In this document: positions 567-63,467 of the stretch, piece by piece
Position numbering within the stretch: position 1 is the stretch's first letter
How the letters are laid out: each line of letters starts with the position of its first letter
Assembly (NCBI RefSeq): GCF_006345805.1
Contig: NC_043010.1
Coordinates: 67,332,001-67,396,000, forward strand
DNA from: Octopus sinensis
Taxonomy: Eukaryota
Reading direction: 5' to 3'
DNA: 64,000 nt
Position numbers and translations under genes: made by a program
Notes under the pieces: generated by a model
The model's input: only the letters and a program-made list of their open reading frames with translations
The model's database searches: none
What the model was told of the DNA's origin: nothing

Positions 567-616
567 TGACAGTTTCTGTGACAGATCAATAAATATCTGT
601 TTCTCATTTCAGAAAA
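567..616 (+). other. Splice acceptor region homologous to the ZNF-B acceptor (AG at 611-612)
   Basis: 567-616 aligns ungapped to 22551-22600 at 42/50 identity; both end TTTCAG|AAAA. Confidence 0.8.
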
Positions 617-2010
617 GTTCCACTGAAGATTCACACCTCCATACCCCTGACACAGCTACAGTCTCTCTTCAGAATGTCTTCCACACCAAGTTCCTCCAAA
701 AGCCAGCAACAACAACTCTTACATCAATCAGAAAATCATTACATTTACAGAGCCTAAGAAGCATCAACAAATTTCCACCTTTTACCTGTGTTTATTGCAA
801 TAAGAATATATTCGCTTCCATAAGTGTTTTGTCTTGCTGTTACTTCAAACTCTTCTTGCTAGAGTTTACCGCAGTCATTTCCTTTGAGTTGTGTATCCCC
901 TGATGATCTTCTTCCCCACTTTGTCCCCAGCAACACATCATCTCTTGTCATATCAGTGCATTCTATGGTTATTTAGTCACATTCACTTAATTACTACCCT
1001 CAGCTCTTGTTCTAACCTCTTCCAGTAGTTCATTTTTACTCCTCCAGCTTCCTCCGTCTTGAGATATTTGTTACAAGCTATCAACCACTTCTCACTCAAA
1101 GTTACCTTGGAATGGGGGTGAAACTCCTGTAACCCCACCAAAAATGTTGTAACCCCAATATACCCTCCACCAGAAATGTTAGGAATGATATATATTTTAT
1201 TGGTCATTGATGTATGTAAGTGATGCCAACTTGAAGAAGTTAGGTTTGACCTGTGATCCATGCTGACATAAATATAATTTCCTGCTGAACTGCCACAGAA
1301 ATAAAAGTAGAAAATTAAAAATAAACAACCAGATTAATCAAGAAGATAAAAACAACAAAAGACAATGCATTAAATTTCATTTTCAAATTATCAGTTATCA
1401 TCATTATCGTCATCAGCATCTCCATCATCAACAAAATCCTTACTTTTCATTGTCATCACAGACCTGTACTGTGATTTATATTAGTAAATCTTTCAAAACA
1501 CTCATTGCCAAACATCAAAACACTCACCCACTCAGTGAGAAGGTGGAGATAAAGAACAGGAAATCTTGATTGCTTAAACCAGTGTTGTTGTAGGTGACTG
1601 ATTGATAACAATCCTTAGATTCTCATACATATATATATATATATGTCAGCAGTATTTGAAAAATCAGGGTAGACCTTGGATATTACTTTCATGACCGTTG
1701 TTACGATGATGATTCAAATATTGGAGGAATAACATAAGTAAGCAGAACAGATTCAATACCTTCGCATTCCACTATTGTGGTGTGTTTCCAGACTATTCCA
1801 TTGTTTAAGAAACAAATTGTGGCATCATATCAAATAGATATAAAAAAAAAAGAAAGAAGATGGTTAAGACCAATCATAGTAATATTTGTTAAATCTTGCT
1901 CTCTAAAACACACTTCTAAAACTTGCCTGAGTGTAACACCTATTCAAAAATCACACACTTACAGTTTTTTTTTTTTTTTTTTTTGACATTTTAAAAATCA
2001 GGTTGTAAAA

Positions 2011-2931
2011 ATGTATTTTGTTGAGAAATATGTTGTTGAAAAACGATACAAATGTGAAGTGTGCAACAAGTGTTTTACAGGGAGTTCAGATCTGCGTATC
2101 CATACCAGGACACATACGGGGGAGAAACCCTACCAATGTGACCACTGCAAACAAGCTTTCACAACGTCTTGGAACTTAAAAACTCATATTCGGACACACA
2201 CTGGGGAACGCCCATTCAAGTGTGACCTTTGTGGTATTGGTTTCACAACTTCATCTTCACTAAAGATCCACACACGCATTCACACAGGTGTGAAGCCATT
2301 CACCTGTTCAATCTGTCAGAAAATGTTTTCTGATCGCTCTCATCTACAACGTCATTTACGAATCCACACATCGGAGAAACCTTTTCGTTGTGTCATCTGC
2401 GAAAAGAGTTTCTCCACCAGCACACACCTGAAACACCACATTTGGACTCATACAGATCAGAAACCGTTCATGTGTGACATGTGCGACAAATCCTTCCCAG
2501 ACAATTTCCAATTGAAGCGTCACATTCAGACTCATTCGAACGAGAGACCGTATCAGTGTTCTGTCTGTCTGAAATCCTTCTCCACCAGTACCAACCTCCG
2601 ACGTCACGAGTGGACGCACACCACCGAGAGGCCCTACATATGTGATATCTGTGGTAAATCTTTCTCCACTAACTGTAATTTGTTACGCCATACTAAAATA
2701 CACACTGACCACATTCTGTCGAACATTAACATGAGGCGAGCTACAGCTCCCCCTGGATTAGACGGCAACAAACTAGAAAAAGATAAAAGCGAGGTAAAAG
2801 AAGAGGAGAAAAAAGAAGAGTACCCCTTTGATTTTAAATCCACCTTTTCTGAACAGAGTACCTCATTCTCCCATGATATAGATACCCCAATGATTAAAGA
2901 CACCACTTTATTACAGATGTACTATTCATAG
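2011..2931 (+). CDS. C2H2 zinc-finger protein ZNF-A, 8 tandem fingers plus acidic C-terminal tail (306 aa from first ATG)
   Basis: Eight CxxC-x12-HxxxH units with TGEKP-type linkers; poly-T tract and CAG at 1999-2001 just upstream suggest an acceptor, so the true start may lie in an upstream exon. Confidence 0.93.
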   Translation: MYFVEKYVVEKRYKCEVCNKCFTGSSDLRIHTRTHTGEKPYQCDHCKQAFTTSWNLKTHIRTHTGERPFKCDLCGIGFTTSSSLKIHTRIHTGVKPFTCSICQKMFSDRSHLQRHLRIHTSEKPFRCVICEKSFSTSTHLKHHIWTHTDQKPFMCDMCDKSFPDNFQLKRHIQTHSNERPYQCSVCLKSFSTSTNLRRHEWTHTTERPYICDICGKSFSTNCNLLRHTKIHTDHILSNINMRRATAPPGLDGNKLEKDKSEVKEEEKKEEYPFDFKSTFSEQSTSFSHDIDTPMIKDTTLLQMYYS

Positions 2932-3189
2932 TCGACAGTCCCTACATACAGATTTTTGTTCCCTATCGTATCATGTTATTTAGTGAAACACTATCTGAGC
3001 CCTCCATCCTACCGTAATTGGTACAGACTGGAACATAGAATTAAACAAATTTCATAAAAGTCATAAATCTCTCTACACCAATGCATTTTTGTTATGTCTC
3101 TGTTATTATCGTGAAAATTCCTTGTTGTTCAACTTAACTTCCAGTGTTATACAACAGTGCTTTATACACATACACACACACACACACCT

Positions 3190-4157: not shown

Positions 4158-4984
4158 GATTCTTAGAGTGTGGAGTGTGACAGTTTGTAATAGTTTAGAT
4201 CCTGGATAAGGTAGAAAAGGAGTCCATAGTGCCGATGAGACACAGACTGGTAAGTACGTCACTGGTGCCTTTGTGACTTTATTTTATTCTAGGTAGGGGT
4301 GTTGGTCCTACACAAACCCATTTTCATCTCAGGAATGAAGTTATCCATATTAGTCTGACCCCTATTGTTTGGCCTGTCCAGCATGGAAGGCTTTGCCAGG
4401 AGCATGAGCTCCGGTTGAATAGCTCTCAGGGCCATATACAAACCACCACACCACAATAATGTCTGAACCTTGTAGTAAAATGGTTCATTAAGCCAGAGTA
4501 ACCAAAAGTACAGTACTAACCCCTTGAATGGGATACCAGTCTATCACAAAATTTAACTCCCAGTTATCCTTGGTACTCATTTTCCAGCTTATTTTATCAG
4601 AGAACAGTAAATATGGAAGCAGTGGCATTCATACATTTCTCATTGGTATTTGTGGAGACAGAGAAGTGAACTGGCTACAACCGGGGTTGAAATTGTCTTG
4701 CTCAAACCGATAAAAAAGCTTCTACATAGCCACTTGGCCTGCTAGAAATATCAACTAAATCTACTTTAACCCTTCGGCTTTCAAATTACTCTATCAAGTG
4801 TAATGTTTAGTTATTCACCTTGTTTGGAATTAATCATACATTATCTGGTAGCTTTGGCATTAGGAAGGGCATCCAGTTGTAGAAACCCAAGATGCAACGC
4901 AGTGGAACTGAACCCTGAACCATGTGGTTGGGAAACGAACTTGTTACCACTCAGTCAAGCCTTCATCTATTAAATGTTCTTCTT

Positions 4985-5335
4985 TCTTTTATTCTTTTAC
5001 TTGTTTCTATCATTTGATTGTGGCCATGCTGGAGCACCACCTTAAAGGGTTTTAGTTGAAGAAACTGACCCCAGGACTTGTTCTTTGTAAGCCTAGTTCT
5101 TATTCTATTGGTGTCTTTTGCCAAACTGCTAAGTTACAGGGACGTAAACACACCAACATCAGTTGTCAAGCAATGCCACAGATGGGGGATAAACACACAC
5201 ACATAAATATATATGACAGGCTTCTTTCAGTTTCCGTCTACCAAATCCACTTACAAGGCTTTGGTTTACCCAGGGCTATATAGACACTTGCCCAAGGTCA
5301 GACTGAACCCGGAACCATGTGGTTGGGAAATTTTT
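4985..5335 (-). mobile_element. tRNA-headed SINE, family 2 (internal CA/TA microsatellite)
   Basis: Colinear with copies at 26765-27180 and 37140-37540. Confidence 0.8.
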
Positions 5336-5754
5336 TTTTAGGTATTTATATATTTTAGGAAACAAGCTCAGATCAACTCAGGTAAGTCGGGTTCTCGGGA
5401 TGAGGGTGTCTATTGTTAGGCACGAAACATCCAATAATCTCAGAATACAACACTGAAGAGGGGTCGCAGTATGGCATCTGTAGATTTATGTTAAACTTAA
5501 CAACATATAAAAATAATTAGACCAAAGGAAAATATTTTATTCTTTTATTTGTTTCAGTCATTTGACTGCGACCATGCTAGAACACTTCCATGAAGAGTTT
5601 TAGTTGAACGAATCAACCCCAGGACTTATTTTTTAAGCCTAGTACTTATTCTATCAGTCTCTTTTGCTGAACCACTAAGTTAAAGGGAAGTAAACACACC
5701 AACACCGGTTGTCAAGTGATGATGGGGGACAAACACAGAAAGACACAGACAGAT

Positions 5755-6080
5755 CATCATCATCATCGTTTTACGTCCGCTTTCCATGCTGGCATGGGTT
5801 GGACAGTTCAACTGGGGTCTGGGAAGCCAGGAGGCTGCACCAGGCCCAGTCTGATCTGGTAGAGTTTCTACAGCTGGATGCCCTTCCTAATGCCAACCAC
5901 TCCGTGAGTGTAGTGGGTGCTTTTTACGTGCCAGGCGAAGCTGGCATCGACCACGATTGGTTGGTGCTTTTTACGTGGCACCGGCATGGAGGCCAGTCGG
6001 GGCGGCGCTGGCAATGGCCACGTTCGGATGGTTCTTTTACGTGCCACCAGCACTGGTATCACAACTACAATTTCCATTGA
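5755..6080 (-). mobile_element. RTE-related 3' UTR fragment with (GAT)n tail and internal ~60 bp tandem units
   Basis: (CAT)n-CGTTTTACGTCCGCTTTCCATGC...GGATGCCCTTCCTAATGCCAACC plus TTTTACGTGCCAC modules; one of about 15 copies in the window. Confidence 0.75.
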
Positions 6081-19969: not shown

Positions 19970-20350
19970 TTGGTGCCACGTAAAAAGCACCATTCGAGTG
20001 TGATCGTTACCAGTGCTGCCTTACTAGCACTTGTGCCAGTGGCACGTCAAAAAGCATTCGAGCGAGGTCGTTGCCAGTACTGCTGGACTGGCTCCTGTGC
20101 AGGTGGCACGTAAAAAACATTATTTGAGTGTGGCCATTGCCAGTACTGTCTGACTGATCCTTGTGCTGGTGGCACGTAAAAGCACCCACTACACTCTCGG
20201 AGTGGTTGGCATTAGCAAGGGCATCCAGCAGTAGAAACTCTGCCAGGTCAAGATTGGAGCCTGGTGCAGCCATCTGGTTCGCAAGTCCTCAGTCAAATCA
20301 TCCAACCCATGCTAGCAAGGAAAGCGGACGTTAAACAACAATGATGATGA
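19970..20350 (+). mobile_element. RTE-related 3' UTR fragment with four tandem modules
   Basis: Four G(C)CACGT(A)AAAA modules, then the GGTTGGCATTAGCAAGGGCATCC core and GGACGTTAAAC(GAT)n tail. Confidence 0.8.
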
Positions 20351-21143
20351 TTATCTTGTATGTGACACAAGAGGTTGGAATGTGTTGTTGAATAACTTCA
20401 TGACAATCATTTGGGTGGCTTTTTTTTCTGTGGGAGGTGCATATGCATTATAAAAGCATGTGGCTTAGTGGTTAGGGTATTCAACTCACAATTTTAAGTT
20501 TGTGGGTTCAATTCCTGGTGATGCGTTGTGTCCTTCAATAAGACACTTTATTTCACATTGCTCCAATCTACTCAGCTGGCAAAAATGAATTGTACCTGTG
20601 TTTCAAAGGGGCCAACCATGTCACATTCTGTGTCACACTGAATCACTCTTAGAACTACGTTAAAGGTACACGTGTCTGTGGAGCACTCAACCACTTGCAC
20701 GTTAATTTCACGAGCAGGCTGTTCTGTTGATCAAATTAACTGGAACCCTCATCGTCGTAACTGATGGAATGCCAGAAGTGCATGTGCATTCTAGAATTCT
20801 TGAATGTTTTGTAGAAGTGCTCTCTCAGATGGGGTAGTATCTCATGTGGCATTTGATAATTTATGCTATTAAACAGTTTCTCTAGTTTAATGCTATTGTT
20901 ATAAACAATATATGTACAGTGTCTGGCAGAATCTGTAGAGCATCAGTCATAGTGTCTTGCAGTGTAATTCATTTATCCATGTCCCTCTTCCATTCCGAGT
21001 TCAAACCCTTTCCGGATTGCATTTGCTTTTCGTTCTTTGAGGTAAAAAAAAAAAAAAAGCACTGGTCAAGTACTGATGATGAGGATGACCACTGTCCAAT
21101 GGCTGAAGGCAATAAAAGAATCACTCATAAATCTACAATACTT

Positions 21144-22318: not shown

Positions 22319-22614
22319 AAACTGTATGGAAGCTGTTTGTGTGTGTGTGTCTTAGTGATTTATATGTGTAAGATATCTGATAAATCCATGTTTCCAAATG
22401 AAAATTACTTGAGGTTTTATGAGTTATGCAGATTATATCTTTTACATCCTCACCAGTTTGGTGAACCAGTAATTGACTGGTTGGAAACTTACACTTATTG
22501 CTACTGTTGTTCATGAAAATGTGATTTAATATGAGTAAAAATATAATAGATGATAGTTTCTGTGACTGGCCACTAAATATGAGTTTCTCTTTTCAGAAAA
22601 CAAACCTGTGAAAG

Positions 22615-23838
22615 ATGTCAATGATGGAGCAAGCTGCAGATGGAGATTTGATGTCTTCTCTGACAACTTCCAATTCTGAAGCATCCGTGGAAGGGAATTT
22701 TACAGAGAGTGAAAAAAGTAGTGCGAAAAATATGAACGAGACTTCGTCAGCTGGAGATGCGGATAAAGAGACAACTGCGATGACCGAAGTTATCGATCCT
22801 CTCACTTGTACTGTTTGTAAAAAATCTTTCAATGATTCTGCCCTCTTGCAAAAACACATTAAAACACATTCAGTAAAGAAACCCTTTGAGTGCGGCATTT
22901 GCTCGAAAGCATATGCTAAGTTTTCACAATTAAAGCTTCATACAAGATCACACACCGGCGAGAAACCGTACAAGTGTGACTATTGCTGTAAATGTTTTGC
23001 CTGCAGTTCAGATTTGCGCATCCATACCAGAACGCACACGGGCGAAAAGCCGTACGAGTGTGGTTACTGCCATCAAACTTTCTCGACCTCTACGAATTTA
23101 AAAACTCATATTAGGCGGCACACGGGCGAAAGACCCTTTCAGTGTGACGTTTGTGGCATTGCATTTACAACCTCATCTTCACTTAAGATCCACACACGAA
23201 TTCACACAGGCGTGAAGCCATTCACCTGTTCAATCTGTCAGAAGATGTTTTCCGACGGTTCCCATCTACAGCGCCATTTACGGACTCACACGTCGGAGAA
23301 ACCTTTTCGTTGTGTCATCTGCGAAAAGAGTTTCTCCACCAGCACACACCTGAAACACCACATTTGGACTCATACAGATCAGAAACCGTTCATGTGTGAC
23401 ATGTGCGACAAATCCTTCCCAGACAATTTCCAGTTGAAGCGTCACATTCAGACTCATTCAAACGAGAGACCGTATCAGTGTTCTGTCTGTCTGAAATCCT
23501 TCTCCACCAGTACCAACCTCCGACGTCACGAGTGGACGCACACCACTGAGAGGCCGTATATATGTGATATCTGTGGTAAATCTTTCTCCACTAACTGTAA
23601 TTTGTTACGCCATACTAAAATACACTCTGACCAAATTCTATCAAATATTAATGTGAAGCAAAGTTCCGCTGCTCTGAGCGAGGACAACAAAGAGACAGCT
23701 GAGGTGAAAGAGGAAGAAAAAGTCGAGTGTTCCATTGATTTGCCACCCACAGTTTCTGAAGATGTTACATCGGATTCACAGGATTTATCTGCTGCATTAA
23801 CAGAAGACTCTCCACTGCTGAAAATTTATTATTGGTAA
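22615..23838 (+). CDS. C2H2 zinc-finger protein ZNF-B, acidic Ser/Thr-rich N-terminus plus 10 tandem fingers (407 aa), single coding exon
   Basis: Ten canonical fingers; acceptor TTTCAG at 22591-22596; in-frame TGA six bases before the ATG, so 22615 is the probable start. Confidence 0.95.
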   Translation: MSMMEQAADGDLMSSLTTSNSEASVEGNFTESEKSSAKNMNETSSAGDADKETTAMTEVIDPLTCTVCKKSFNDSALLQKHIKTHSVKKPFECGICSKAYAKFSQLKLHTRSHTGEKPYKCDYCCKCFACSSDLRIHTRTHTGEKPYECGYCHQTFSTSTNLKTHIRRHTGERPFQCDVCGIAFTTSSSLKIHTRIHTGVKPFTCSICQKMFSDGSHLQRHLRTHTSEKPFRCVICEKSFSTSTHLKHHIWTHTDQKPFMCDMCDKSFPDNFQLKRHIQTHSNERPYQCSVCLKSFSTSTNLRRHEWTHTTERPYICDICGKSFSTNCNLLRHTKIHSDQILSNINVKQSSAALSEDNKETAEVKEEEKVECSIDLPPTVSEDVTSDSQDLSAALTEDSPLLKIYYW

Positions 23839-25693
23839 ACATCATGGTGATTTTTTTTTTTTTTTTTTTTTGTAAAATACTACCTGAATCCAGCTCATCA
23901 AATTACACAGTGAAGTGCTCTGCCTAACCCCTCCATCCCACCACAGTTGGTATACTGTGCAATAGAGAATTAAACAGTTTGTAATGGTCACAGATCTATA
24001 CCAAGGTACTTCTGTTACATCTCTGTTACTAAGAATATCCATTGGTATCCAACCTAACTTCTTGTGTTGTGCAACAATGTTATATAACACTTTGTCACTT
24101 CTCTCTCTCTGCATATATAAAAAGATATATAGATATATATATCTATTTGGAAATGATTGTAAAGAACTCATTTTCTCAGTGTAGCATGAAAACTGATCTG
24201 GCCAAATTTGCAAAAAAGATTAAATATGAGTATTTTGAGAAATACTTCACTTTTTTTTCTTTTTTTTTTTTGTATTTTGTATGTCAGAAATACTTTTTTT
24301 TTTTCCTCAGAATTATGATGAAATTTTCTTATGAGAACGGGTGAATAATTTAAAATGAAGTACTAGTGTAAATCTTACTGCAATACAAATAGTATTACAT
24401 CTTACTAATGTGCAGTGTTACAATCCTGCTGCAACTGTTACAACACTACCTCATGACCATACAGTATTAGAATTCTCTCTAGTTACCATACACCGTAACC
24501 CTCCCTTCCAAGAGAGCATTTATATGGTTGCTTGATCTACTAGAAATAGCAACCAAATCTCCCTCAAATTACACCCTATCATTTTAAGTAAGGAAAGCTC
24601 ACATTAGATAATACAGTCTTATGTATGTCTAAAAAGATGGGATAGTAACACCTGAAATGGTTTTTGATTACAGGTCAGCTTGATCCAGTCTGATCCAGGA
24701 GCTAAACATCATTTACAATCCCTTGCTACTGTAATATAATACCCCTGTATTATTCCTTTTTTTTTTTTTAATAATTTCTATTGACAAACCAATTGAATAA
24801 CATGTCTTAAATAACAACAATAAGGAAGCCGTATCTTTTATATTTTAAATACAAATGACTCTAGTGACTTCACTCTCCAAAACTGGATAGAGCAATTTAT
24901 GCCATCTAAGACTGTTTATAGGGACCTAAGTTAAGGCACCACAGTGAGTTCAATCCTTGTTACATCCATCATACGGTATCTTTATACTAGAAACATTACT
25001 CTGATCAATGCTGGTTGACTGCCTACATTAAAAAAAAAAGACGAAACAAAAAAAAAATTATGCTCCAGTCCTGCATTAAACTGGGATGGTTAGTGATAGA
25101 AAAGCTATCCCAGCTGGTTATAATTCATATATGGAGGTAGCTACTTTGGCAAACATCCAATGGGAAATGAGAAAATGGATATAAGCATTAAAAAAAATTT
25201 TTTTTTTTTTTGTTAAATATATTCAATTTGATACTCTCTCTCTCTCTCTTGAGTTCCAGCTCTGTGAATATACGATTTATACTATTAACTTTGGTATGTC
25301 TTGTTTAAATATTCTATGCAGCTTATGATACTTTCACCTCCAACTCTCCAAGGTATTGACTGAAATGAAAATACGACATGGAAGCAATTTTGACAGATTT
25401 CCCATCTTTTTTTTTTTTTTTTTTTTTACTTTATTTCAATCATCACAGTCGAATATTTTGTTAATGTAAGTGAGAATGGAACAGATTGTCTCTGTCATTC
25501 AAAGAGTATTAGTTTTATCTAATATTAATTGTTATTTTATTTATTTTTGGTACATAAGTTCTATTGGTAACAACCAACATATGGGAAAAAAAATATGCAA
25601 AACTATAAAATATTTCAAAACAAAACCCAAAAAAAGGCAATCTCCGGTTTGTGTATTCATTAATGTATATATTAGATTTATTTGGGACAATGC

Positions 25694-28100: not shown

Positions 28101-28435
28101 ATATATATATATATACTTATGATGTTAATGCTTGACTATTTCATCCAAGCTGAGAAAAAAATAACATTTTAAAATGGAATTTTCATACATATTAAGGTTT
28201 GTATAGCAATCACAATCACTTATTGATTATATTGATTCTGTGGTCCACTTCCAATGAATCACTTGTTTATAATTACCATACTTACTGGGTTAAATTGCTT
28301 GGGTGAAAGAAATAAGTATTTAATTCATTTATGCAGATGCCTTACAATGAATTATAGGCCTAAGTTCAAATCTTACTGGAATCAGCTATACCTTTTATCT
28401 CTTTTCATATGAATGAAATAACCCCATTAGTACAC

Positions 28436-29845
28436 CTTTTCCCTACTCTCCAAAAAGGACTTCATACTTGAGCAAGAAGTAAAAAAATTATCTATGTTTA
28501 CCTCTTTTGTTTTCTTTGTATTATCCTTCATCCTTCTTACTCTGCTCGGAATCTTTTTTTTCACTGGAGACGAGTTGTACTCAAAGATATTTATTGGTAT
28601 ATCCTGCTCTTGGAATGTAGATGATGGATAATCAAGTTCTGATGCATCTTCTGGTTCCTTACTATTTGTGGTATCTTTTGATTCAGACACAGAATCACAT
28701 TTTTTTACAGATCTGCCAACTTTTGTATTGTTCTGCTTCAAAGCAAAACAAGGATGGTGTTTAGCTGTTGCTTCCGCTTGAGGCTGGTCATGTATTTTGT
28801 CACCCAAGGATGGATGAGTTTCGCTTCTAATTGGAAATGTCCAAGATTTGTTGCGTTTTTGTTTATTTATGTTAGAATCTGACTTATTTTTGCTGTGTTG
28901 AAAATTGGGTTTATTGCTGAGAGAATTACCATTATTATTTTGTGATCGTCTTGGATCAACAAATTTTCTGGTTGTATTTTCAATGTCTTGTTTTGGTTTG
29001 GTTGATTGATTTCTTTTCAGCTTTAGCTTATTAAATGTCTTACCATTTACAGTTCCACTTTTACCATTATCACAATCCGTTTCTTTTGTCGGCTTACCTG
29101 AATCAATCGGCTTGCCACTTATCATGCTGCCATTTCTATTACCTGGCTGGTTCAACAACTGATTGTCTCTAGACTTACGGTTTCTATTTTTACCTGAGTT
29201 GTTGTCATTATTTGATGGCCGCTGTGAAACTATCACATCCAGATTATCATATGCTTGGCTCATACAGCTGTTTGTCTCACACAAACTTTGATCATCTTCC
29301 AAAGCTGAAGCAAAAATCTTTCCTGTTTCTGACTGAATAAGTTTTTGCTCCTTTGTTAAGCCATTCAGTGGTATTTGCCCATTTTGTCTTTGGAAATTGT
29401 CTCCTTCAGGGCTAGAAGCTATGTTTTTCCTAGAGAATATAGTTTCTTTGTTTTTATTCTGCACAGATATTTCACTGATCTTTTTACTCTTGGCTGTGTT
29501 GTCCGAGTGATTTTTGAGAAGCTCATTTGAAGAGCTTAGCTGATTTTTATTATTTCTTTTTATTTGGTTTTGGGTTCTCCTTGGAATTTTATATTTGGGA
29601 GCCTTGGGTGACAAAGTGACATTCTTATTAGATTTCCTCTTCTTCGTCACTGGTGATACATTATGTCGCAGATTGATGCTGTAAACCCGAGATCCCGCAT
29701 TTCTTACTGCTGCTTCAGAAGACACTTCATTTTCAGAACTGCTTGTGTTTTGAGTTGATAAATTAAATGTACGTTGGCCCAAGTCACATATCAGTATTCT
29801 CTTTTTCGAAGATTTCAGAATTGTCTTTCTTGACATTGTCCACTT
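28436..29845 (-). CDS. Large exon of an unidentified minus-strand gene: basic, Ser/Asn/Lys-rich, probably disordered
   Basis: 469-codon stop-free ORF in AT-rich, non-repetitive DNA; putative acceptor TTCAAG| (in frame, KWTM..) and donor AAG|GTGTAC after ...FLESREK. The ATG at 29836 is an alternative start. Confidence 0.8.
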
Positions 29846-34402: not shown

Positions 34403-36334
34403 CTAAAACACAAACCAATCAAGTTTATGTATAAATATTCTTGTTATATGTTTGTTTCCTATTACACAATATTAAAAGAACGGCTAAAAATTTTCTGAAG
34501 CAGCACCCCCACTAATTTTATCTACAAGCCACCACTGATCACCCCCTGCCTAGGTTGCATTTATAGGTGGTGATGTGTCGAAGGATTAAAGCATTGAATA
34601 AAATACTTGGTACTTTTATGTGTTACTGTGTTACCAGCATACAAGTCAAATTTTTCAGACCAAAATTTACAACCCCCAAAATTAGGTCAACTTATATACC
34701 AGGATGACTTTTGAGGAGCAAAAATTCCATATGAAAGGCAACAGGATTTGGAGAGATAGTGATAATGTTTGAATGGTTACATTACACGTTTGCACTATGT
34801 TGACTTGTATGATAGAAAATATGTTAAGTACAAATGTTAAGGAGATCATGGAGGTTTAATAAAATAAAGTACCAGTCCAGTACTTAGACTGACATAACTG
34901 ATTCTGGTGGATCCCTGGCTTCTTCAGGCAATGAGACTACATACGAGAATCCCAAACAGACTTTGCACTTAACCCAGCCTGGATCAGCCTAAATATGCTA
35001 CCTGTTTTATGTTCTAACCAGCTAGATCCAGCCTATTACACCTACCCTTCAATGCCATTCTAGGAATATACTATCACATCATTAAAATTTCAAAGCAACA
35101 AATTAATGCATGATTAATTCAAAACAATTTGAATGAAAAAGCATTACATTTGACAGAATAATCTGAATGCTAAAGGGTTAAAGGATAGATAAGAAGTGTT
35201 AACCCCCAATGATCACAGGATTCCTGTGAGAAACAGGCAGTGACTACACACATTATGATAGAAATTCTGTAATTAACAAAATATGTGGGGCACCGATCGT
35301 GGCTGCTGCCAGCCTCCCCTGGCACCTGTGCTGGTGGTACGTAAAGAGCACGCACTACACTCACGGAGTGGTTGGTGTTTGGAAGGGCATCCAGCTGTAG
35401 AAACTTTGCCAGATCAGATTGGATTCTGGTGCAGCCTCTTGGCTTCTCAGACCCTGGTCGAACCGTCCAACCCATGCTAGAACGGAAAACGGACATTAAA
35501 CGATGATGGTAAGGATGATGATGATGATAATCCATCATTGTGTCAAGTACAAGGTGGTATATGAGGTAAAGAAGAGTCTATATTTTTTGTTTAGCTTTTC
35601 TCTTTCAGGTGTATCCACTGATTGACTCTAATGCTATGGATGTTTGAAGTGATCAATACTATCAAAAGTAATACCGAGTGAGAATTAAAATTAGATGGTA
35701 GAATTAAAATATAAGGTAAAGATATCATAAATCCATTCTTCGGTGCTTTTTAGGTATAACTCAAGACATGTTTCACTTTGTATTTCATTTAATATTTCAT
35801 CTTGAGTTTTATTTATTCTGAGTTTATCAATAAATCACATTTTGCTTTTCTTGTGTGTGTATTTCTCAAACTTAGCAGAATGGTCAAAACAGTTCAGACC
35901 AAAATGCTTATAACAAAGAACACTAAATCCCAGTGCCTTATAGAAAGTGGCTGTTGTAAGGAGCAGCTAAGGATTCAATACTGCATACTTAATGATAAAC
36001 AAATGGTACACAAAAAGATACAGCAGGATCCTCAGTACATAAACTGGATACCAAAACTTAGAGGTGGTCAATGAACAAAAGTAATTAAAATCACCATATT
36101 GACAAATCAGAGTCACTCCTGCCTACATTGGCTCCGTTATATCAATTTATAGTTGTCTCTACTGATTTTTGACCATTAAGCTAATGATTCTTTTCTCATC
36201 ATTCTATGTGTAATTTTTATTCAGTGGTTCTCAACTGAGGTTCACATGAACCTTAGGGGTCGATTTATGATTTTACTGTTAAAATTTATGCGCAATAAAT
36301 CAGTAATACTTCATCAATACACAAGATAATGTAA

Positions 36335-39244: not shown

Positions 39245-39845
39245 ATATGTACGTACCTGTCTGTCTGTCTGTCTGTCTATCTGTCCATCCGTCCATCCAT
39301 CCATCCATCCGTCTGTCCATCCATCCATCCATCCGTCCATCCGTCCATCCATCCGTCCATCCGTCCGTTCATCCACCCACCCACCCGTCCGTCCGTCCAA
39401 AATCCATCCATCCATCCACCCACCCACCCACCATCCATCCATCCATCCATCCATCCATCCATCCATCCATCTATCCACCCACCCATCCATCCATCCATCC
39501 ATCCATCCATCCATCCATCCACCCGTCCGTCCGCCCGTCCGTCCGTCCGTCCATCCATCCATCCATCCATCCATCCATCCACTCACCCACCCGTCCGTCC
39601 GTCCGTCCAAAATCCATCCATCCATCCACCCACCATCCATCCATCCATCCATCCATCCATCCACTCACCCACCCACCCGTCCGTCCGTCCGTCCAAACTC
39701 GATCCATCCATCCACCCACCCACCACCATCCATCCATCATCCATCCATCCACCCACCCATCCATCCATCCATCCATCCATCCATTCATCCACCCATCCGT
39801 CCGTCCGTCCGTCCGTCCATCCATCCATCCATCCATCCATCCATT
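39245..39845. repeat. Compound (ATCC)n/(GTCC)n/(ACCC)n tetranucleotide array with a higher-order duplication
   Basis: CGTCCGTCCAAAATCCATCC recurs at ~39390 and ~39600. Confidence 0.92.
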
Positions 39846-41239: not shown

Positions 41240-41374
41240 ACACACACACACACATATATGTGTATATATATATATTTAAGTATATATGTTGTCATATATA
41301 CACATATAAATATGGATATATATGCATTTGTATCATCTGATGTTTGTTTTTCCATGCTGACATGAGTTGGACAA

Positions 41375-41883
41375 CACACACACACACACTCATACACACA
41401 ACACACACTCATACACACACACTCATACACACACACACACACTCATACACACACACTCATACACACACACACACACTCATACACACACACTCATACACAC
41501 ACACACCACACTCATACACACACACTCATACACACACACACACTCATACACACACACACACACTCATACACACACACTCATACACACACACACACACTCA
41601 TACACACCACACTCATACACACGCACTCATACACACACCACTCATACACACACACCACACACACACTCATACACACACACACACACTCATACACACACAC
41701 TCATACACACAACACACACTCTACACACACACTCTACCACACACACACACACTCATACACACCACTCATACCACACACACACACACTCATACACACACAC
41801 TCATACACACACACTCATACACACACACACACACTCATACACACACACTCATACACACACACACACACTCATACACACACACT

Positions 41884-41920
<37 letters not shown>
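41375..41920. repeat. Long (CA)n array punctuated by CTCATA
   Basis: Direct inspection. Confidence 0.92.
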
Positions 41921-41921
<1 letters not shown>

Positions 41922-42753
41922 CACACGGATGTAAAATAAGGAAAAGATGCGTGAGAGTGAAAGAAACCTACATTTCCATATTTCCATGAAATACTAGACA
42001 TTCCAAAACCTATCTTTAAACCAAGATATAATACTACACAGAGCAGAATCGGTAGTTGAAACGATGTCCAAATCCACCCCCGTTTCAGTAGAGCACCCCA
42101 ATTCATTTGGTTGGGTTGAGCCAATCATCATTGGATGATGAAAAACGATATTCCTTCAGCAAACCAGCTGTGCTCGCTGGCAACAGCATAGCAACAGCAA
42201 CTGGATACCAAACAAACTGCCTGTGTTTGTGTGTGTGTGTGTGTGTATGGTAGTTTGCTGTCTCTAGCAATGTGTGTCTGACTAGTGTATGACTATATGT
42301 GTGTCTGTCTGGGTGTCTGTGGGCTTTTCCATCAAGGCATCCGTGTATGTTTTTGTGATTTATCACTGTATAACTACACTTGCGTCAGAAATTAATTACA
42401 TTCTCAAATTTCTACATTAAATGTTAAATCAATTAACCTATGAGTGTTCAAAATGTCTTACGCGTGAGTTAGTATTGTGTGGGTGATTCGATCCTTGCGT
42501 GGCGCTCCTATATCTATTAAACAAAGCAAGAGATTGTCTGCATCCGCACTCCAAGTTGTTGCATGCTATGTCAACATCATAAGGCTGTGACTCTAAACTG
42601 CTTGCAACAAAGTTACGTCATTGTTCTGCGCAACAGTGAACTCGCAACAAAGCAATAGTTCGAGATATGGCCACATACCTGAGTGAAGAGCAAATCAAGG
42701 TGCTAATTAATTTCTGACGGTAGTGTATGCATACATTTGCTTGATTTATGGCC

Positions 42754-42785
<32 letters not shown>

Positions 42786-42928
42786 CATGTGTGTAGATAA
42801 GTATGTAAGTGTTTTGAGTTCGTGTCTGTGTGCACCTAAGCCTTAATATGAGAATATGTCTTACATGTTTAGTGATATGTGCGTACTAATGTTACTGTTT
42901 TAATGAGAGAGAGGTGGAAGGGATGTGC

Positions 42929-43001
42929 GTGTGTGTGTGAGTGTGTGTGTGTGTGTGAGTGTGTGAGTGTGTGTGTGTGTGTGAGTGTGTGTGAGTGTGT
43001 A

Positions 43002-43033
<32 letters not shown>

Positions 43034-43056
43034 TGTGAGTGTGTGAGTGTGTGTGA

Positions 43057-43091
<35 letters not shown>

Positions 43092-43185
43092 TGAGTGTGT
43101 GAGTGTGTGTGTGTGTGCGTGTGTGTGAGTGTGTGTGTGTGCGTGTGTGTGAGTGTGTGTGTGTGTGAGTGTGTGTGAGTGTGTA

Positions 43186-43230
<45 letters not shown>
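42929..43230. repeat. Long (TG)n array punctuated by GAGT
   Basis: Direct inspection. Confidence 0.92.
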
Positions 43231-45211: not shown

Positions 45212-45401
45212 CACAAACAAGCACATATGTACATGTGTGTGTATGTATGTGTATATAAGCATACTTGTGTGTGTATATATATATATATGTGTATATATAT
45301 ATATATATAATATATATATATATAATATATATGCATATATATATGCATATCTATATATATGCATATCTATATATATGCACATATAAATATATATGCATAT
45401 A

Positions 45402-45458
<57 letters not shown>

Positions 45459-45525
45459 ATATATATATATATATGCATATCTATATATATGCATATATAT
45501 GTGTGTGTGTATATATATATATCTC
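45170..45525. repeat. (TA)n/(TATGCA) compound microsatellite; similar tracts at ~48290-48450, 49690-49990, 53150-53680, 59170-59300, 60480-60760 and 62560-62685
   Basis: Direct inspection. Confidence 0.9.
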
Positions 45526-46609: not shown

Positions 46610-47348
46610 TTGTGTCTTTGTTGTATATATGATTATTCGCCCACAACTTAACAAAATGTGTTGGCGTGTTTACACCCCTGGAATATAACATTTAAAAAAA
46701 AAAACCAAAAAAAAAGGAAAAGAAAACAACCTGGTAGAATAAATACTAGACTTAAAATACATACTGGAGTCTACTTATTTGATAAACTTCAAGATAGTGC
46801 TCCAGCATGACTGCAATTCTATGACTGGAGCAATTATAAAATGCAAATAAGTAATATATTAGAGAATCTTAACACTGTGAGCTGTGTGTAAACTATTAAT
46901 GCACAAGTGCGGGCATAGCTATGTGGTAAAAAGTTTGTTTGTCAAATACATGGTCCTAGGTTCAGTCCTACTGCATAGCATATTGGGTTAGTGGCTTCTA
47001 CTATAGCTTAGGGCTGGCCAAACCCTTGTGAGTGGATTTGGTAGATGGAAACTGAGAGAAGTCCATCACATACATATATACATACATACATACATACATA
47101 CATGCCTGCCTGCCTGCCTGCCTGCCTGCATGCATGCATGCATGCATGCATGTATGCATACATACACACATACATACATACATACATACATAATTACATA
47201 CATAATTATATACATACATACATACATATATACATACATACATACATGCCTGCCTGCCTGCCTGTCTGTCTGCCTGCATGCATGCATGCATGCATACATA
47301 CATACATACATACATACATACATACATACATACATACATACATACATA

Positions 47349-52498: not shown

Positions 52499-53361
52499 AA
52501 AAGAAGCTTCTTCTAAGCAAACAAGACTTGTTTTTTAAAAGAAATCCACAAGTCTGTCTATGAGTGCTTGTGAATCGGCAATCACGCCTACAAGTGATAG
52601 TGCACGAGTCTCGTGCAAGTGAAAGTGATTCAGAAAATAATTATAATAATGATATTTTTTATCATAAATGATCTTGACATTCTTTTTACTTTACATAAAA
52701 TATTCTTTACATTCTAATGTTGCTTTATTGCCATTTATTTACGAGTATTATAAATTTTATATGTATAATATTTTTCTGGGAACGAATTACGATTTATAAT
52801 ATTGCTACTATGAGAAATTATTGCTCTGCTTTATAAGTTTTCACTTTACGAGCAGTCTCCAGGAAGAAATTAACTCATATATCAAGGCATTACTGTACAT
52901 AGTGTACAGAAGAGGTTATAATCCAAGCTGTAGCTTAATACTATAAGTTGCACCCTTAACCAGTGTAATTTTGTATTAGTCGTAAAGGTTTGTCTGAAGA
53001 ATTACAGGTAGGAGGCTCTTATACATGTTTTTCTAGATATTTATCTTTATGACTCCTATCCTGTAATGAAACATTCATAACATGGAATTAAGAATATACT
53101 AAATTTTTCCAGTCTTTTGTTTAGATGTTTATATCTGTCAGTATGTCTGTCTTTCTATCTATCTATCTATGTATCTATCTATATATATGCATGTATGTAT
53201 GTATGTATGTATGTATGTATGTATGCACACACACACATATGCATACATACTTCTTACTCCCCTATTTATATACATGCATACATACACACATACACACATA
53301 TACACATTTACACACACACATACATACATACATAGGTATATATACATACATGCATACATAC

Positions 53362-53424
<63 letters not shown>

Positions 53425-53550
53425 CACACACACATACATATATGTATATATTTATAGATACATTCATATGTATATATATATACATACATGCATACATTCA
53501 CACACACACATATATATATATATATATACACATTCACACATGCATACATT

Positions 53551-53583
<33 letters not shown>

Positions 53584-54099
53584 ATGTATATACACATACA
53601 TACATATACATACATACATACATACATATATATATACACATATACATACATATGTGTATGTATGTGTGTGTGTGTATATATTGAGGGGGAGAGAAGTCGG
53701 AGAGATAGAGAGATTTGTCTATGACAGATAGAAATACATGCACATTACCTCACACACACACACATACTACACGTACAAAAACACACTCGCACAGAAACAA
53801 TGACAGGCAAAACAGCTGTTACCGTGGTATCAGTTACAGTGTAGTATTTCTTTTACACATTCTGCCGGAAAGTAATAGTTGATAACGTCATTGTTGGCGG
53901 TGTTGTTGTTGTTTGTGTGACTCCCCACCATTGCCACCACCATCACTATCCCCATCGCCGCCGCCACCACCACCACCACCACCACCACTACCACCACTAC
54001 TTACATGCTTACATTTTCTTTGAATGAATCTGTAGAGAATACGGAACAAATGAGGAAATTATGAATGAAAGCACTTAAGAATTCCGCTGTAGACCCCGC

Positions 54100-58141: not shown

Positions 58142-58956
58142 TGTCATCATTGTCGTCATTGTCGTCATCATCATCCTCTTCATCATCATCTTCCTCATCA
58201 TCATTGTCGTTTAACATCCACTTACCATGCTGGCATGGGTTGGATGGTTTGACTGAGGACTGGCAAGCTGGAAGGCTGCACAAAGCTCCAATCTGATCTG
58301 GCAAGGTTTCTACAGCTTGATGCCCTTCCTAACACCAACCACTCTGTGAGTGTAGTGGGTGCTTTTTACATGCCACCAGCATGGGAGCCAGTCAGGTGGC
58401 ACTGGCAATGACCCATGCTATATATATGTGTGTGTGTGTGTATATATATATACATATATATGACAAGCTTCTTTCAGTTTCCCTTTACCAAATCCACCCC
58501 CAAGGCTTTGGTTGGCATGGGACTACTGTAGGAGACACTTATCAAAGGTGGCCTGCAGTGGGACTCAACCTAGAGCCATGTAGTTAGGAGGTGAGCTATA
58601 TACCATGGGGAGAAAAGTGAGTATATGGTGCTTTATGTGTGAAGTTCCTGGCATCAGGTTTTGGTAAATATATCTGTTTGAAGTAAACCAGAGACTGGCC
58701 CATTAACAGGCATTGTGACACAGTATGAATAAATGAGGCATGAATTACAACAACTGGTATAGTATGAATTACAAGAACAACTATAAGCATGGTTGGTATG
58801 AAGTTTGCTTCCCAACCATATTGTTCTGGATTCAGTCCTACAGTTTAACATCTTGGGTAAGTGTCTTCTGTTATAGCCCTGGGCAGACCAAAACCTTATG
58901 AGTGGATTTGGTAGATAAAATCTGAAAGAAGCCTGTCTTATATATATGTATATATA

Positions 58957-63277: not shown

Positions 63278-63467
63278 CATCATCATCATCATCATCATTT
63301 AGCGTCCGTTTTCCATGCTAGCATGGGTTGGACGGTTCTACTGGGGTCTGTGAAGCCAGAAGGCTTCATCAGGCCCAGTCAAATCTGGCAGTGTTTCTAC
63401 GGCTGGATGCCCTTCCTAACGCCAACCACTCCGTGAGTGTAGTGGGTGCTTTTTACGTGCCACCCGC
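63278..63467 (-). mobile_element. RTE-related 3' UTR fragment, one module
   Basis: (CAT)n tail, core, single TTTTTACGTGCCAC. Confidence 0.8.

What the first reader, a model, noticed from the sequence alone, without database searches (positions are those of the whole stretch)
2371..2703. Sharply bounded near-identical tract between ZNF-A and ZNF-B (probable gene conversion across 21 kb)
Hand alignment at offset 20922: 2047-2250 about 74% identical (53/204 differences), 2251-2370 about 87% (15/120), 2371-2703 about 98.5% (5/333, all synonymous third positions), then about 76% straight after the last His codon. Protein constraint alone would not preserve synonymous sites. Inference: recent non-allelic gene conversion homogenised the last four fingers (A5-8 = B7-10) while the N-terminal fingers and tails diverged. 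This would be a concrete concerted-evolution mechanism inside the known cephalopod C2H2 ZNF cluster expansion.
Basis: partly seen in the sequence, partly recalled or inferred. Interest (0 to 1): 0.7.

Follow-up and report, generated by a model that had tools for sequence, protein, structure and literature searches.

The report
Gene conversion between two octopus ZNF genes
Two neighbouring zinc-finger genes of the octopus Octopus sinensis share a stretch of about 460 bases that one gene copied from the other a few million years ago, which is a clear but ordinary case of gene conversion between duplicated genes.

Summary
At offset 20922, 2371-2703 differs from 23293-23625 at 5 of 333 bases, all synonymous. 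The flanks differ at 24-26% and their dS is saturated. No codon shuffle out of 200000 came close.

The window is Octopus sinensis chromosome CM016872.1. I fetched both genes from O. vulgaris and the ZNF-B orthologue from O. bimaculoides. These data exclude three rivals:
- Assembly error: two independent assemblies show the same structure.
- Nucleotide-level constraint: orthologue dS inside the tract is normal.
- A single unequal crossover: the tract has two junctions.

They also show the classical incongruence. ZNF-A is A-type at 2038-2244 and from 2704 onwards, but B-type in between.

Non-allelic gene conversion is therefore supported, most simply from B into A. It happened after the O. bimaculoides split and at or before the O. 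sinensis/O. vulgaris split.

Refinements:
- The tract is mosaic. A second homogenised block lies at 2245-2330. A 40-base divergent patch lies at 2331-2370 and a 13-base patch at 2625-2637.
- Between O. sinensis and O. vulgaris no substitution is shared by both copies within one species.
- Only two ZNF genes lie in the window.
- ZNF-A is N-terminally truncated but still under purifying selection.

This is a known kind of event and of modest interest.

The parts
2011..2931 (+). ZNF-A open reading frame, 306 aa, 8 C2H2 fingers. It is the N-terminally truncated paralogue and the probable acceptor of the conversion.
   Evidence: ORF; Pfam. The protein is identical in O. vulgaris, and all 11 nucleotide differences between the species are synonymous.
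22615..23838 (+). ZNF-B open reading frame, 407 aa, 10 C2H2 fingers, the probable donor.
   Evidence: ORF; Pfam. The protein is identical in O. vulgaris (16 synonymous differences). The O. bimaculoides orthologue is 97% identical in protein and ungapped (L005 24231-23008).
2371..2703 (+). Main homogenised tract in A (T2), fingers A5-A8.
   Evidence: 5/333 differences from B in O. sinensis and 7/333 in O. vulgaris. Only 3 are fixed in both species. dS A-B is 0.08-0.12. It differs from O. bimaculoides B at 11-13/333, which is an orthologue-level distance.
23293..23625 (+). Main homogenised tract in B (T2), fingers B7-B10.
   Evidence: Partner of 2371-2703 at offset 20922. It differs from O. bimaculoides B at 16/333, with dS 0.298.
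2245..2330 (+). Second homogenised block in A (T1), from the end of finger A3 to most of finger A4. The partner in B is 23167-23252.
   Evidence: One fixed A/B difference (2277) in 86 bases, against a background of 24.9% (binomial P = 6e-10). A differs from O. bimaculoides B at only 2-3/86.
2331..2370 (+). 40-base divergent patch between the two homogenised blocks (P1). It encodes the recognition helix and H-X3-H of finger A4/B6. The partner in B is 23253-23292.
   Evidence: There are 11 fixed A/B differences in 40 bases, including the two amino-acid differences R/G and I/T. O. bimaculoides B has the A state at 6 synonymous sites and the B state at the 5 sites of the amino-acid-changing codons and 2361.
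2625..2637 (+). 13-base micro-patch inside T2 holding the only three fixed A/B differences (2625, 2634, 2637). The partner in B is 23547-23559.
   Evidence: A has the same state as O. bimaculoides B at all three sites, so the B copy of O. sinensis and O. vulgaris is the derived one.
2038..2244 (+). Unconverted 5' flank in A (fingers A1-A3), old paralogous divergence. The partner in B is 22960-23166.
   Evidence: 55/207 differences between A and B, with dS saturated at 2.5-3.9. A differs from O. bimaculoides B at 56-57, and B at 18.
2704..2737 (+). Unconverted 3' flank, starting at the first base after the last His codon. The partner in B is 23626-23659.
   Evidence: 8/34 fixed A/B differences. 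B of all three species is identical here and A differs from all of them at 8 sites. Further downstream the tails and 3' flanks align only with gaps.
2995..3166 (+). Diverged homology between the 3' flanks of A and B (partner 23924-24086). It shows that the original duplication was genomic and old.
   Evidence: blastn gives 69.8% identity over 172 bases; alignment.
567..810 (+). Remnant of the original start of the ZNF-A exon. It holds a conserved splice-acceptor region (567-616, partner 22551-22600), a decayed N-terminus and the start of a first finger (PFTCVYCNKN). Homology to B then ends until 2038.
   Evidence: 84% identity over 50 bases; sequence and alignment. The frame from the ATG at 674 runs into a stop, read from the sequence.

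Best explanation
ZNF-A and ZNF-B are old tandem duplicates, 21 kb apart, in the same orientation, with saturated synonymous divergence. They lie on Octopus sinensis chromosome CM016872.1. In the lineage leading to the O. vulgaris/O. sinensis pair, a non-allelic (interlocus) gene conversion copied about 460 bases of the finger-coding exon from one copy into the other. This happened after the split from O. bimaculoides and at or shortly before the O. sinensis/O. vulgaris split. The direction was most simply B into A.

The mechanism is inferred, not shown: repair of a break in one copy used the paralogue as template, either by synthesis-dependent strand annealing or by heteroduplex formation with mismatch repair. 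This overwrote A 2245-2703.

The outcome is mosaic. There are two homogenised blocks (2245-2330 and 2371-2703) separated by a 40-base patch that stayed, or again became, different. That pattern fits patchy heteroduplex repair or two or three separate short events. The right end falls exactly where the finger array ends and the more diverged, indel-bearing tail begins.

Since then both copies have accumulated ordinary synonymous substitutions independently in each species. Both remain under purifying selection.
For: Shown:
(1) The tract is real and far beyond chance.
(2) Synonymous sites are homogenised. dS between A and B is 0.08-0.12 in the tract, and saturated or undefined in the flanking finger segments.
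(3) O. vulgaris, an independent assembly that differs by roughly 1-5% in most non-coding segments around the genes, has both genes with the same boundaries.
(4) The four-sequence site patterns show only 3 fixed A/B differences in 2371-2703 and 1 in 2245-2330. The other differences are private to one copy of one species, so homogenisation predates the species split.
(5) The O. bimaculoides B orthologue was reached through the neighbouring gene. A differs from it at 56-57/207 in 2038-2244 and 8/34 in 2704-2737, but only at 2-3/86 and 11-13/333 in the two blocks. B differs from it at 18, 0, 4-5 and 16 in the same four segments. So A is a mosaic of A-type flanks and a B-type core.
(6) Three-point branch lengths in the tract are A 1, B 4-6 and O. 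bimaculoides 10-12. In 2038-2244 they are 46.5, 8.5 and 9.5. The A/B coalescence in the tract is therefore younger than the O. bimaculoides split (P = 0.0017 under a clock).
(7) Both flanks of the tract are paralogue-specific, so there are two junctions. That requires conversion rather than one crossover.

Weak support for B as donor: GC3 of the tract is 0.55-0.57, against about 0.52 in B's unconverted fingers and about 0.40 in A's. At 10 of the 15 fixed differences inside 2245-2703, A equals O. bimaculoides B.
Against: - The O. bimaculoides orthologue of ZNF-A could not be fetched. If A and B were already homogenised there, the direction cannot be read, and the history would be repeated conversion rather than one event.
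- Conversion between sequences that were only about 75% identical is mechanistically difficult. This hints at earlier rounds of homogenisation in this segment.
- The 40-base patch is not simply 'unconverted A'. The B copy of O. sinensis and O. vulgaris carries six clustered synonymous W-to-S changes there relative to both A and O. bimaculoides B. That needs an additional event.
- A_vul shares two adjacent non-CpG states (2436, 2439) with O. bimaculoides B, against the simple tree.
- Counts within the tract are small.
Confidence: 0.9

Rival explanations
1. Long-running concerted evolution. The C-terminal four fingers have been homogenised repeatedly since the duplication, including before the O. 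bimaculoides split, while the N-terminal fingers and tails escaped. The event seen here is only the latest round, and the direction cannot be determined.
For: - Conversion needs high identity, yet the flanks are only about 75% identical. A segment kept similar by earlier rounds would explain why this segment could convert at all (established knowledge of homology dependence; inference).
- GC3 is somewhat higher in the tract (0.55-0.57) than in the other segments (0.21-0.57), as expected from GC-biased conversion.
- The mosaic structure and the odd site patterns at 2436/2439 and in the 40-base patch suggest more than one event.
- Block 2245-2330 is equally close in all five sequences.
Against: - No site in 2038-2737 has the pattern in which a species-specific state is shared by both paralogues of O. 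sinensis or of O. vulgaris. All 12 post-split substitutions in 2245-2703 stayed private to one copy. So no homogenisation occurred in either lineage since the split.
- A single B-to-A event explains the distances to O. bimaculoides B without further assumptions.
Confidence: 0.25
2. Nucleotide-level constraint on the tract keeps synonymous sites identical in both paralogues without any conversion. Possible sources are an RNA-editing structure, an embedded non-coding RNA, an antisense gene or splicing signals.
For: Cephalopod coding sequences are known to carry constraint around RNA-editing sites (my own knowledge, not tested here). All differences in the tract are synonymous.
Against: - Orthologue dS inside the tract is normal: 0.064 (A) and 0.031 (B) between O. 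sinensis and O. vulgaris, against 0.060 and 0.077 outside. It is 0.298 inside against 0.33 outside between B of O. sinensis and B of O. bimaculoides.
- Under the rate reduction needed to explain the A/B identity, about 1.0 and 2.0 third-position differences are expected. Observed are 6 and 16 (P = 7e-4 and 5e-10).
- The RNA fold z-score is -0.84.
- There is no Rfam match in the window.
- There are only short GTG-initiated antisense ORFs.
Confidence: 0.01
3. Assembly artefact: a collapse, mis-polishing or mis-join copied one paralogue's reads onto the other.
For: Near-identical paralogous segments are a classic site of polishing errors. The window comes from a single assembly.
Against: - The O. 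vulgaris assembly (GCA_951406725.2, built de novo from nanopore reads according to PMC10700109) shows the same two loci and the same boundaries.
- Each of the four copies has private substitutions inside the tract: A_vul 2436, 2439, 2550, 2607; B_sin 2511, 2538. Three differences are shared by both species.
- O. bimaculoides B also agrees at orthologue level.
Confidence: 0.01
4. A younger partial duplication, or an unequal crossover, produced a chimeric gene rather than a conversion.
For: Tandem paralogues in the same orientation can recombine unequally. ZNF-A has clearly been rearranged at its 5' end.
Against: - The high-identity region is bounded on both sides by old paralogue-specific sequence: 2038-2244 and from 2704 through the 3' flank.
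- One crossover gives one junction and changes copy number. Here both loci keep their own flanks in three (B) or two (A) species.
Confidence: 0.03

Closest known systems
Interlocus (non-allelic, ectopic) gene conversion between tandem paralogues, as detected with GENECONV-type tests
   Same: It is a short tract of a few hundred bases with near-identity that includes synonymous sites. It is bounded on both sides by diverged paralogous sequence. Both loci are retained, and the gene tree of the tract disagrees with that of the flanks.
   Different: Nothing essential. The tract is mosaic, with a 40-base and a 13-base interruption. The donor could only be inferred from one outgroup orthologue.
Short gene conversions among lineage-specific poly-zinc-finger paralogues in vertebrates and insects (Emerson and Thomas 2009, PMC2604467)
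   Same: That study reports 'short regions of gene conversion' among paralogous poly-ZF genes in many species. Here too the genes are C2H2 poly-ZF genes, tandemly duplicated, with differing finger numbers between paralogues.
   Different: This case is in a cephalopod, whose C2H2 expansion is independent and lacks KRAB (no KRAB hit). It has been dated with two further species.
Homogenisation by gene conversion suggested for cephalopod protocadherin clusters (Albertin et al. 2022, PMC9068888)
   Same: It concerns the same animals and the same idea: lineage-specific duplication plus homogenisation within expanded tandem families.
   Different: That suggestion rests on tree topology of protocadherins. 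[quoted passage not shown] Here a single event is resolved base by base in a C2H2 pair.

Membership tests
Interlocus gene conversion | A segment of significantly higher identity between paralogues than the rest of their alignment | tested here: met
   5/333 differences in the tract against 24-26% in the flanks. 0 of 200000 codon shuffles reached this, and the smallest shuffled value was 16. Binomial P on fixed differences is 8e-37 for 2371-2703 and 6e-10 for 2245-2330.
Interlocus gene conversion | The identity extends to neutral (synonymous) sites and is not explained by local constraint | tested here: met
   dS between A and B is 0.08-0.12 in the tract and saturated outside. Orthologue dS in the tract is as high as elsewhere in the genes.
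Interlocus gene conversion | Two junctions: paralogue-specific sequence on both sides, with both loci retained | tested here: met
   Fixed differences are dense up to 2244 and from 2704 onwards. Tails and 3' flanks are diverged and contain indels. Both loci are present in O. sinensis and O. vulgaris.
Interlocus gene conversion | Phylogenetic incongruence between tract and flanks when orthologues from another species are added | tested here: met
   Against O. bimaculoides B, A is at 27% and 24% in the flanks but at 2-4% in the two blocks. Only the B orthologue was available, so the four-taxon version with O. bimaculoides A was not possible.
Interlocus gene conversion | Non-reciprocal transfer with an identifiable donor | tested here: inconclusive
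   The tract is at orthologue distance from O. bimaculoides B and its GC3 resembles B. This favours B into A, but earlier homogenisation cannot be excluded without O. bimaculoides A.
Interlocus gene conversion | Not an assembly artefact | tested here: met
   There are two independent assemblies, with private substitutions in each of the four copies.
Ongoing concerted evolution (repeated homogenisation) | Species-specific substitutions shared by both paralogues within a species | tested here: not met
   Between O. sinensis and O. vulgaris no site in 2038-2737 has that pattern. All 12 post-split substitutions in 2245-2703 are private to one copy.
C2H2 poly-zinc-finger genes | Tandem C2H2 fingers with TGEKP-like linkers recognised by the Pfam models | tested here: met
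   PF00096 and PF13465 hit strongly. PF00096 passes 8 stretches in A and 9 in B, and B has 10 fingers by eye.
Large cephalopod C2H2 gene cluster | Many C2H2 genes in tandem at the locus | tested here: not met
   tblastn of ZNF-B against the 64-kb window finds only A and B. The wider chromosome was not examined. One other ZNF from the same O. vulgaris chromosome appeared (P0086, 39% identity).
Structured or edited RNA element under nucleotide constraint | Reduced substitution rate at synonymous sites between orthologues, and a stable or conserved structure | tested here: not met
   The orthologue dS is normal, the fold z-score is -0.84 and there is no Rfam match.

The most novel reading that the evidence does not exclude
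The mosaic is maintained by selection rather than by accident. The truncated ZNF-A and the full-length ZNF-B would be kept identical in their last four fingers, giving a shared DNA-recognition module. Their amino-acid-changing codons in finger A4/B6 (R/G and I/T, inside the 40-base patch) and their N-terminal fingers would be protected from homogenisation in several octopus lineages. ZNF-A would then act as a shorter competitor or partner at ZNF-B's target sites. The clustered synonymous W-to-S changes in the patch would be the footprint of repeated, selectively trimmed conversion.
Probability: 0.1. Interest if true: 0.5.

Novelty: new member of a known kind. Interest (0 to 1): 0.25.

Why it matters
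The case gives one cleanly resolved and dated example of interlocus gene conversion in the independently expanded C2H2 zinc-finger family of octopuses. Until now such homogenisation had only been suggested, for protocadherins.

In practice it warns that gene trees, dN/dS scans and duplication dating of cephalopod ZNF paralogues can be misled by short conversion tracts. Here a pair whose flanks say 'ancient' would look a few million years old if judged from the last four fingers.

It also shows that an N-terminally truncated ZNF copy, which was not retrievable from the protein collection searched here, is still under purifying selection. It does not change what is known about how gene families evolve.

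Tried and rejected
- A protein search with full-length ZNF-B returned only generic multi-finger proteins of 49% identity or less. No octopod orthologue surfaced.
- A search with an alignment of the two non-finger tails found nothing in the 5.8-billion collection. In the 1.84-billion representative library it gave only three weak hits, the best at E = 1.5e-7, which I did not inspect.
- The exact-sequence cluster look-up found neither protein.
- The O. bimaculoides orthologue of ZNF-A could not be reached. It should lie about 20 kb upstream of B, beyond the 10-kb flank of L005. The overlapping 625-aa gene model there could not be looked up.
- The Logan contig L006 carries the neighbouring gene from a more distant octopod, but at 3.4 kb it is too short to hold a ZNF.
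- I searched for a donor of the B-specific 40-base patch in the window and among the other fingers in register. None was found.
- I looked for a transposon signature in the 1.2-kb non-homologous stretch of A, 811-2037. Nothing was recognisable.
- Pfam scans of six other window ORFs gave no hits.
- Rejected readings: nucleotide constraint, assembly artefact and a single unequal crossover (see the rival explanations).

Full report
**What is there**

The window is identical to Octopus sinensis GCA_006345805.1, chromosome record CM016872.1, at about 67,332,001-67,396,000. It holds two C2H2 poly-zinc-finger open reading frames on the + strand:
- ZNF-A, 2011-2931, 306 aa, 8 fingers.
- ZNF-B, 22615-23838, 407 aa, 10 fingers.

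A tblastn of ZNF-B against the window finds no third copy. Locally this is a tandem pair 21 kb apart, not a large cluster.

The two genes align without gaps over A 2038-2737 and B 22960-23659 (88% identity). Weaker homology is found in two further places:
- the 3' flanks, 2995-3166 against 23924-24086, at 70% identity;
- just upstream of the ZNF-B exon, 22551-22600 against A 567-616, at 84% identity. This is a polypyrimidine/CAG splice-acceptor region.

The original duplication was therefore genomic and old.

ZNF-A has since lost its N-terminus. After the old acceptor comes a decayed N-terminal remnant and the first residues of a finger (PFTCVYCNKN, about 780-810). About 1.2 kb without homology to B follows, until 2038. 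The present ORF starts at an ATG 10 bases after a poly-T/CAG motif at 1964-2001. That motif looks like a new acceptor, but this is an inference with no transcript evidence.

**Checking the observation**

The five differences in 2371-2703 are third-position and synonymous. NG86 estimates of dS between A and B are:

| Segment | dS A-B |
|---|---|
| 2038-2244 | 2.5-3.9 (saturated) |
| 2329-2370 | undefined |
| 2704-2736 | 1.08 |
| 2371-2703 | 0.08 (O. sinensis), 0.12 (O. vulgaris) |

In 200000 codon shuffles, the fewest differences in any 111-codon window was 16, against 5 observed.

**Related sequences**

Exact-protein look-ups found both genes in the independent O. vulgaris assembly GCA_951406725.2 (L002 and L004). 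Both proteins are identical between the species. All 11 (A) and 16 (B) nucleotide differences are synonymous. For ZNF-A this would have a chance of about 2e-7 if the sequence were drifting. The truncated copy is therefore still a constrained coding sequence. Non-coding segments around the genes mostly differ by roughly 1-5% between the two species, so these are truly separate genomes.

Protein searches for a more distant orthologue failed. The neighbouring gene, window 28141-29836 on the minus strand, did have an O. bimaculoides orthologue (P0125, 82% identity). Its locus (L005, CM046614.1) also contains the ZNF-B orthologue at L005 24231-23008. That orthologue is 407 aa, 97% identical and ungapped. 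The ZNF-A orthologue would lie beyond the end of L005 and could not be obtained.

**What the five sequences show**

1. *Structure of the tract.* Differences between A and B that are fixed in both O. sinensis and O. vulgaris are distributed as follows:

| Segment | Fixed A/B differences |
|---|---|
| 2040-2244 | 51 (dense) |
| 2245-2330 | 1 (at 2277) |
| 2331-2370 | 11 |
| 2371-2624 | 0 |
| 2625-2637 | 3 |
| 2638-2703 | 0 |
| 2704-2737 | 8 |

The homogenised region as a whole is A 2245-2703, 459 bases, and it is mosaic.

2. *Timing relative to the O. sinensis/O. vulgaris split.* All other differences inside 2245-2703 are private to one copy in one species. No site anywhere in 2038-2737 has a species-specific state shared by both paralogues. 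So the homogenisation predates the split, and no further homogenisation is visible in either lineage since. This argues against active concerted evolution at present.

3. *Constraint is excluded.* Orthologue dS inside the tract is 0.064 (A) and 0.031 (B) between O. sinensis and O. vulgaris, against 0.060 and 0.077 outside. Between B of O. sinensis and B of O. bimaculoides it is 0.298 inside against 0.33 outside. Suppose constraint were strong enough to explain the A/B identity. Then about 1.0 and 2.0 third-position differences would be expected, where 6 and 16 are seen (P = 7e-4 and 5e-10). In addition the tract has no unusual RNA fold (z = -0.84), the window has no Rfam match, and there is no sizeable antisense ORF.

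4. *Incongruence between tract and flanks.* Differences from O. bimaculoides B are:

| Segment | ZNF-A | ZNF-B |
|---|---|---|
| 2038-2244 | 56-57 of 207 | 18 of 207 |
| 2245-2330 | 2-3 of 86 | 4-5 of 86 |
| 2371-2703 | 11-13 of 333 | 16 of 333 |
| 2704-2737 | 8 of 34 | 0 of 34 |

ZNF-A is thus a mosaic with A-type flanks and a core that is as close to the O. bimaculoides B orthologue as ZNF-B itself is.

5. *Timing relative to the O. bimaculoides split.* Three-point branch lengths in the tract are A 1, B 4-6 and O. bimaculoides 10-12. In 2038-2244 they are 46.5, 8.5 and 9.5. If the A/B coalescence in the tract were older than the species split, the A branch should be at least as long as the O. 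bimaculoides branch under a clock. This is rejected (P = 0.0017).

**Dating and direction**

The event falls between the two speciation events. From the A-B, O. sinensis-O. vulgaris and O. bimaculoides distances in the tract, the A/B coalescence is about twice as old as the O. sinensis/O. vulgaris split if all differences are counted. It is about as old as that split if the three clustered differences at 2625-2637 are set aside. It is 0.2-0.4 of the age of the O. bimaculoides split. The cited dates are 2.5 and 34 million years (PMC10700109). At this locus the dS ratio of the two splits is about 0.19 rather than 0.07, so I give relative ages only.

The core is at orthologue distance from O. bimaculoides B. 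A single transfer from A into B would have left it at paralogue distance. The simplest history is therefore B as donor and A as acceptor. Two weak observations agree:
- GC3 of the tract (0.55-0.57) is nearer to B's unconverted fingers (about 0.52) than to A's (about 0.40).
- At 10 of the 15 fixed differences inside 2245-2703, A carries the state of O. bimaculoides B, as if A preserved the B sequence of that time.

The alternative is that this segment had already been kept similar by earlier conversions, so that the direction is unreadable. It cannot be excluded without the O. bimaculoides A orthologue. It is mechanistically attractive, because conversion between 75%-identical sequences is inefficient.

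**Mechanism**

What is shown is a non-reciprocal-looking replacement with two junctions at a retained locus. What is inferred is the repair pathway: repair of a break in one paralogue using the other as template, giving a tract of a few hundred bases. The interruptions at 2331-2370 and 2625-2637 would come from patchy mismatch repair or from separate short events.

The right boundary coincides with the end of the last finger. There the alignment becomes more diverged and soon needs gaps. This is where homology-dependent extension would be expected to stop.

**Unexplained details**

- In the 40-base patch, O. bimaculoides B has the B state at the two amino-acid-changing codons (R/G, I/T) and at 2361. 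It has the A state at six synonymous sites. At all six, the B copy of O. sinensis and O. vulgaris has a W-to-S change.
- The share of A-state sites in the patch is 6 of 11, against 5 of 51 in 2038-2244 (Fisher p = 0.002).
- There are two possible explanations. Either B of the O. vulgaris lineage received a micro-conversion from a third paralogue, or O. bimaculoides B was itself patchily converted by its A. For the first, no donor exists in the window or among the other fingers.
- A of O. vulgaris shares CAT CAT at 2436/2439 with O. bimaculoides B, while the other three copies have CAC CAC. Three further such homoplasies (2289, 2538, 2550) are at CpG sites and are probably parallel decay.

**Comparison with what is known**

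Short gene conversions among lineage-specific poly-ZF paralogues have been reported with GENECONV in many animals (PMC2604467). [quoted passage not shown] For cephalopods, homogenisation by gene conversion has been suggested for protocadherins (PMC9068888). My one three-term search of the held library (gene conversion, zinc finger, octopus) returned 13 papers. In the four I opened, none described a resolved conversion tract in a cephalopod C2H2 gene.

**Verdict**

It is a new, well-documented member of a well-known kind of event, of modest interest.

Noticed in passing
window 567-2037: ZNF-A has lost its original N-terminus and first two fingers. The old splice-acceptor region and a decayed N-terminal remnant with the start of a finger survive at 567-810. 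About 1.2 kb of sequence unrelated to B follows. A poly-T/CAG motif (1964-2001) and an ATG at 2011 now head the ORF. The same structure is present in O. vulgaris.
   Followed up: partly
window 2011-2931 and 22615-23838: Neither ZNF protein, nor any relative above 49% identity, was retrievable from the 5.8-billion protein collection, although both are called as genes in two NCBI assemblies. In O. bimaculoides a 625-aa gene model overlaps the 407-aa B orthologue and runs off the fetched locus (L005 23008-28633).
   Followed up: partly
window 23253-23292 (A coordinates 2331-2370): Relative to both ZNF-A and the O. bimaculoides B orthologue, the B copy of O. sinensis and O. vulgaris carries six synonymous W-to-S changes within 40 bases. 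This suggests a further micro-conversion from an unseen third paralogue, or a conversion in O. bimaculoides.
   Followed up: partly
window 2436 and 2439 (L004 10426 and 10429): ZNF-A of O. vulgaris shares two adjacent non-CpG synonymous states (CAT CAT) with O. bimaculoides B, while A of O. sinensis and both B copies have CAC CAC. This conflicts with a simple tree. It may reflect ancestral polymorphism or a small post-speciation conversion.
   Followed up: no
window 28141-29836, minus strand: This is a Ser/Asn/Lys-rich protein-coding gene with no Pfam domain, tail-to-tail with ZNF-B. It is annotated as an uncharacterised protein in O. sinensis, is 82% identical in O. bimaculoides and 71% identical in a Logan contig (SRR11869394). 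It served as the syntenic anchor to reach O. bimaculoides.
   Followed up: partly
window 5753-5933 and about a dozen other places (e.g. 63282-63462, 35335-35516, 58195-58375, 20170-20364): A repeat of about 180 bases is dispersed on both strands at 76-94% identity. A second dispersed family lies around 4984-5330 and 5535-5745. These are presumably SINE-like elements and were not classified.
   Followed up: no
window 39284-39844, 41374-41926, 42924-43230, 45274-45522, 47068-47348, 53270-53652: There are long microsatellites, including (TCCA)142, (AC)276 with a 34-base higher-order unit, and (TG)n, (TA)n, (ACAT)n and (ATAC)n. They generate most of the long spurious ORFs in the window.
   Followed up: no
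ZNF-A/ZNF-B coding sequences in window, L002, L004, L005: At this locus the synonymous divergence between O. sinensis and O. vulgaris (0.06) is about 0.19 of that to O. bimaculoides (0.33). The published divergence times of 2.5 and 34 million years give a ratio of 0.07.
   Followed up: no
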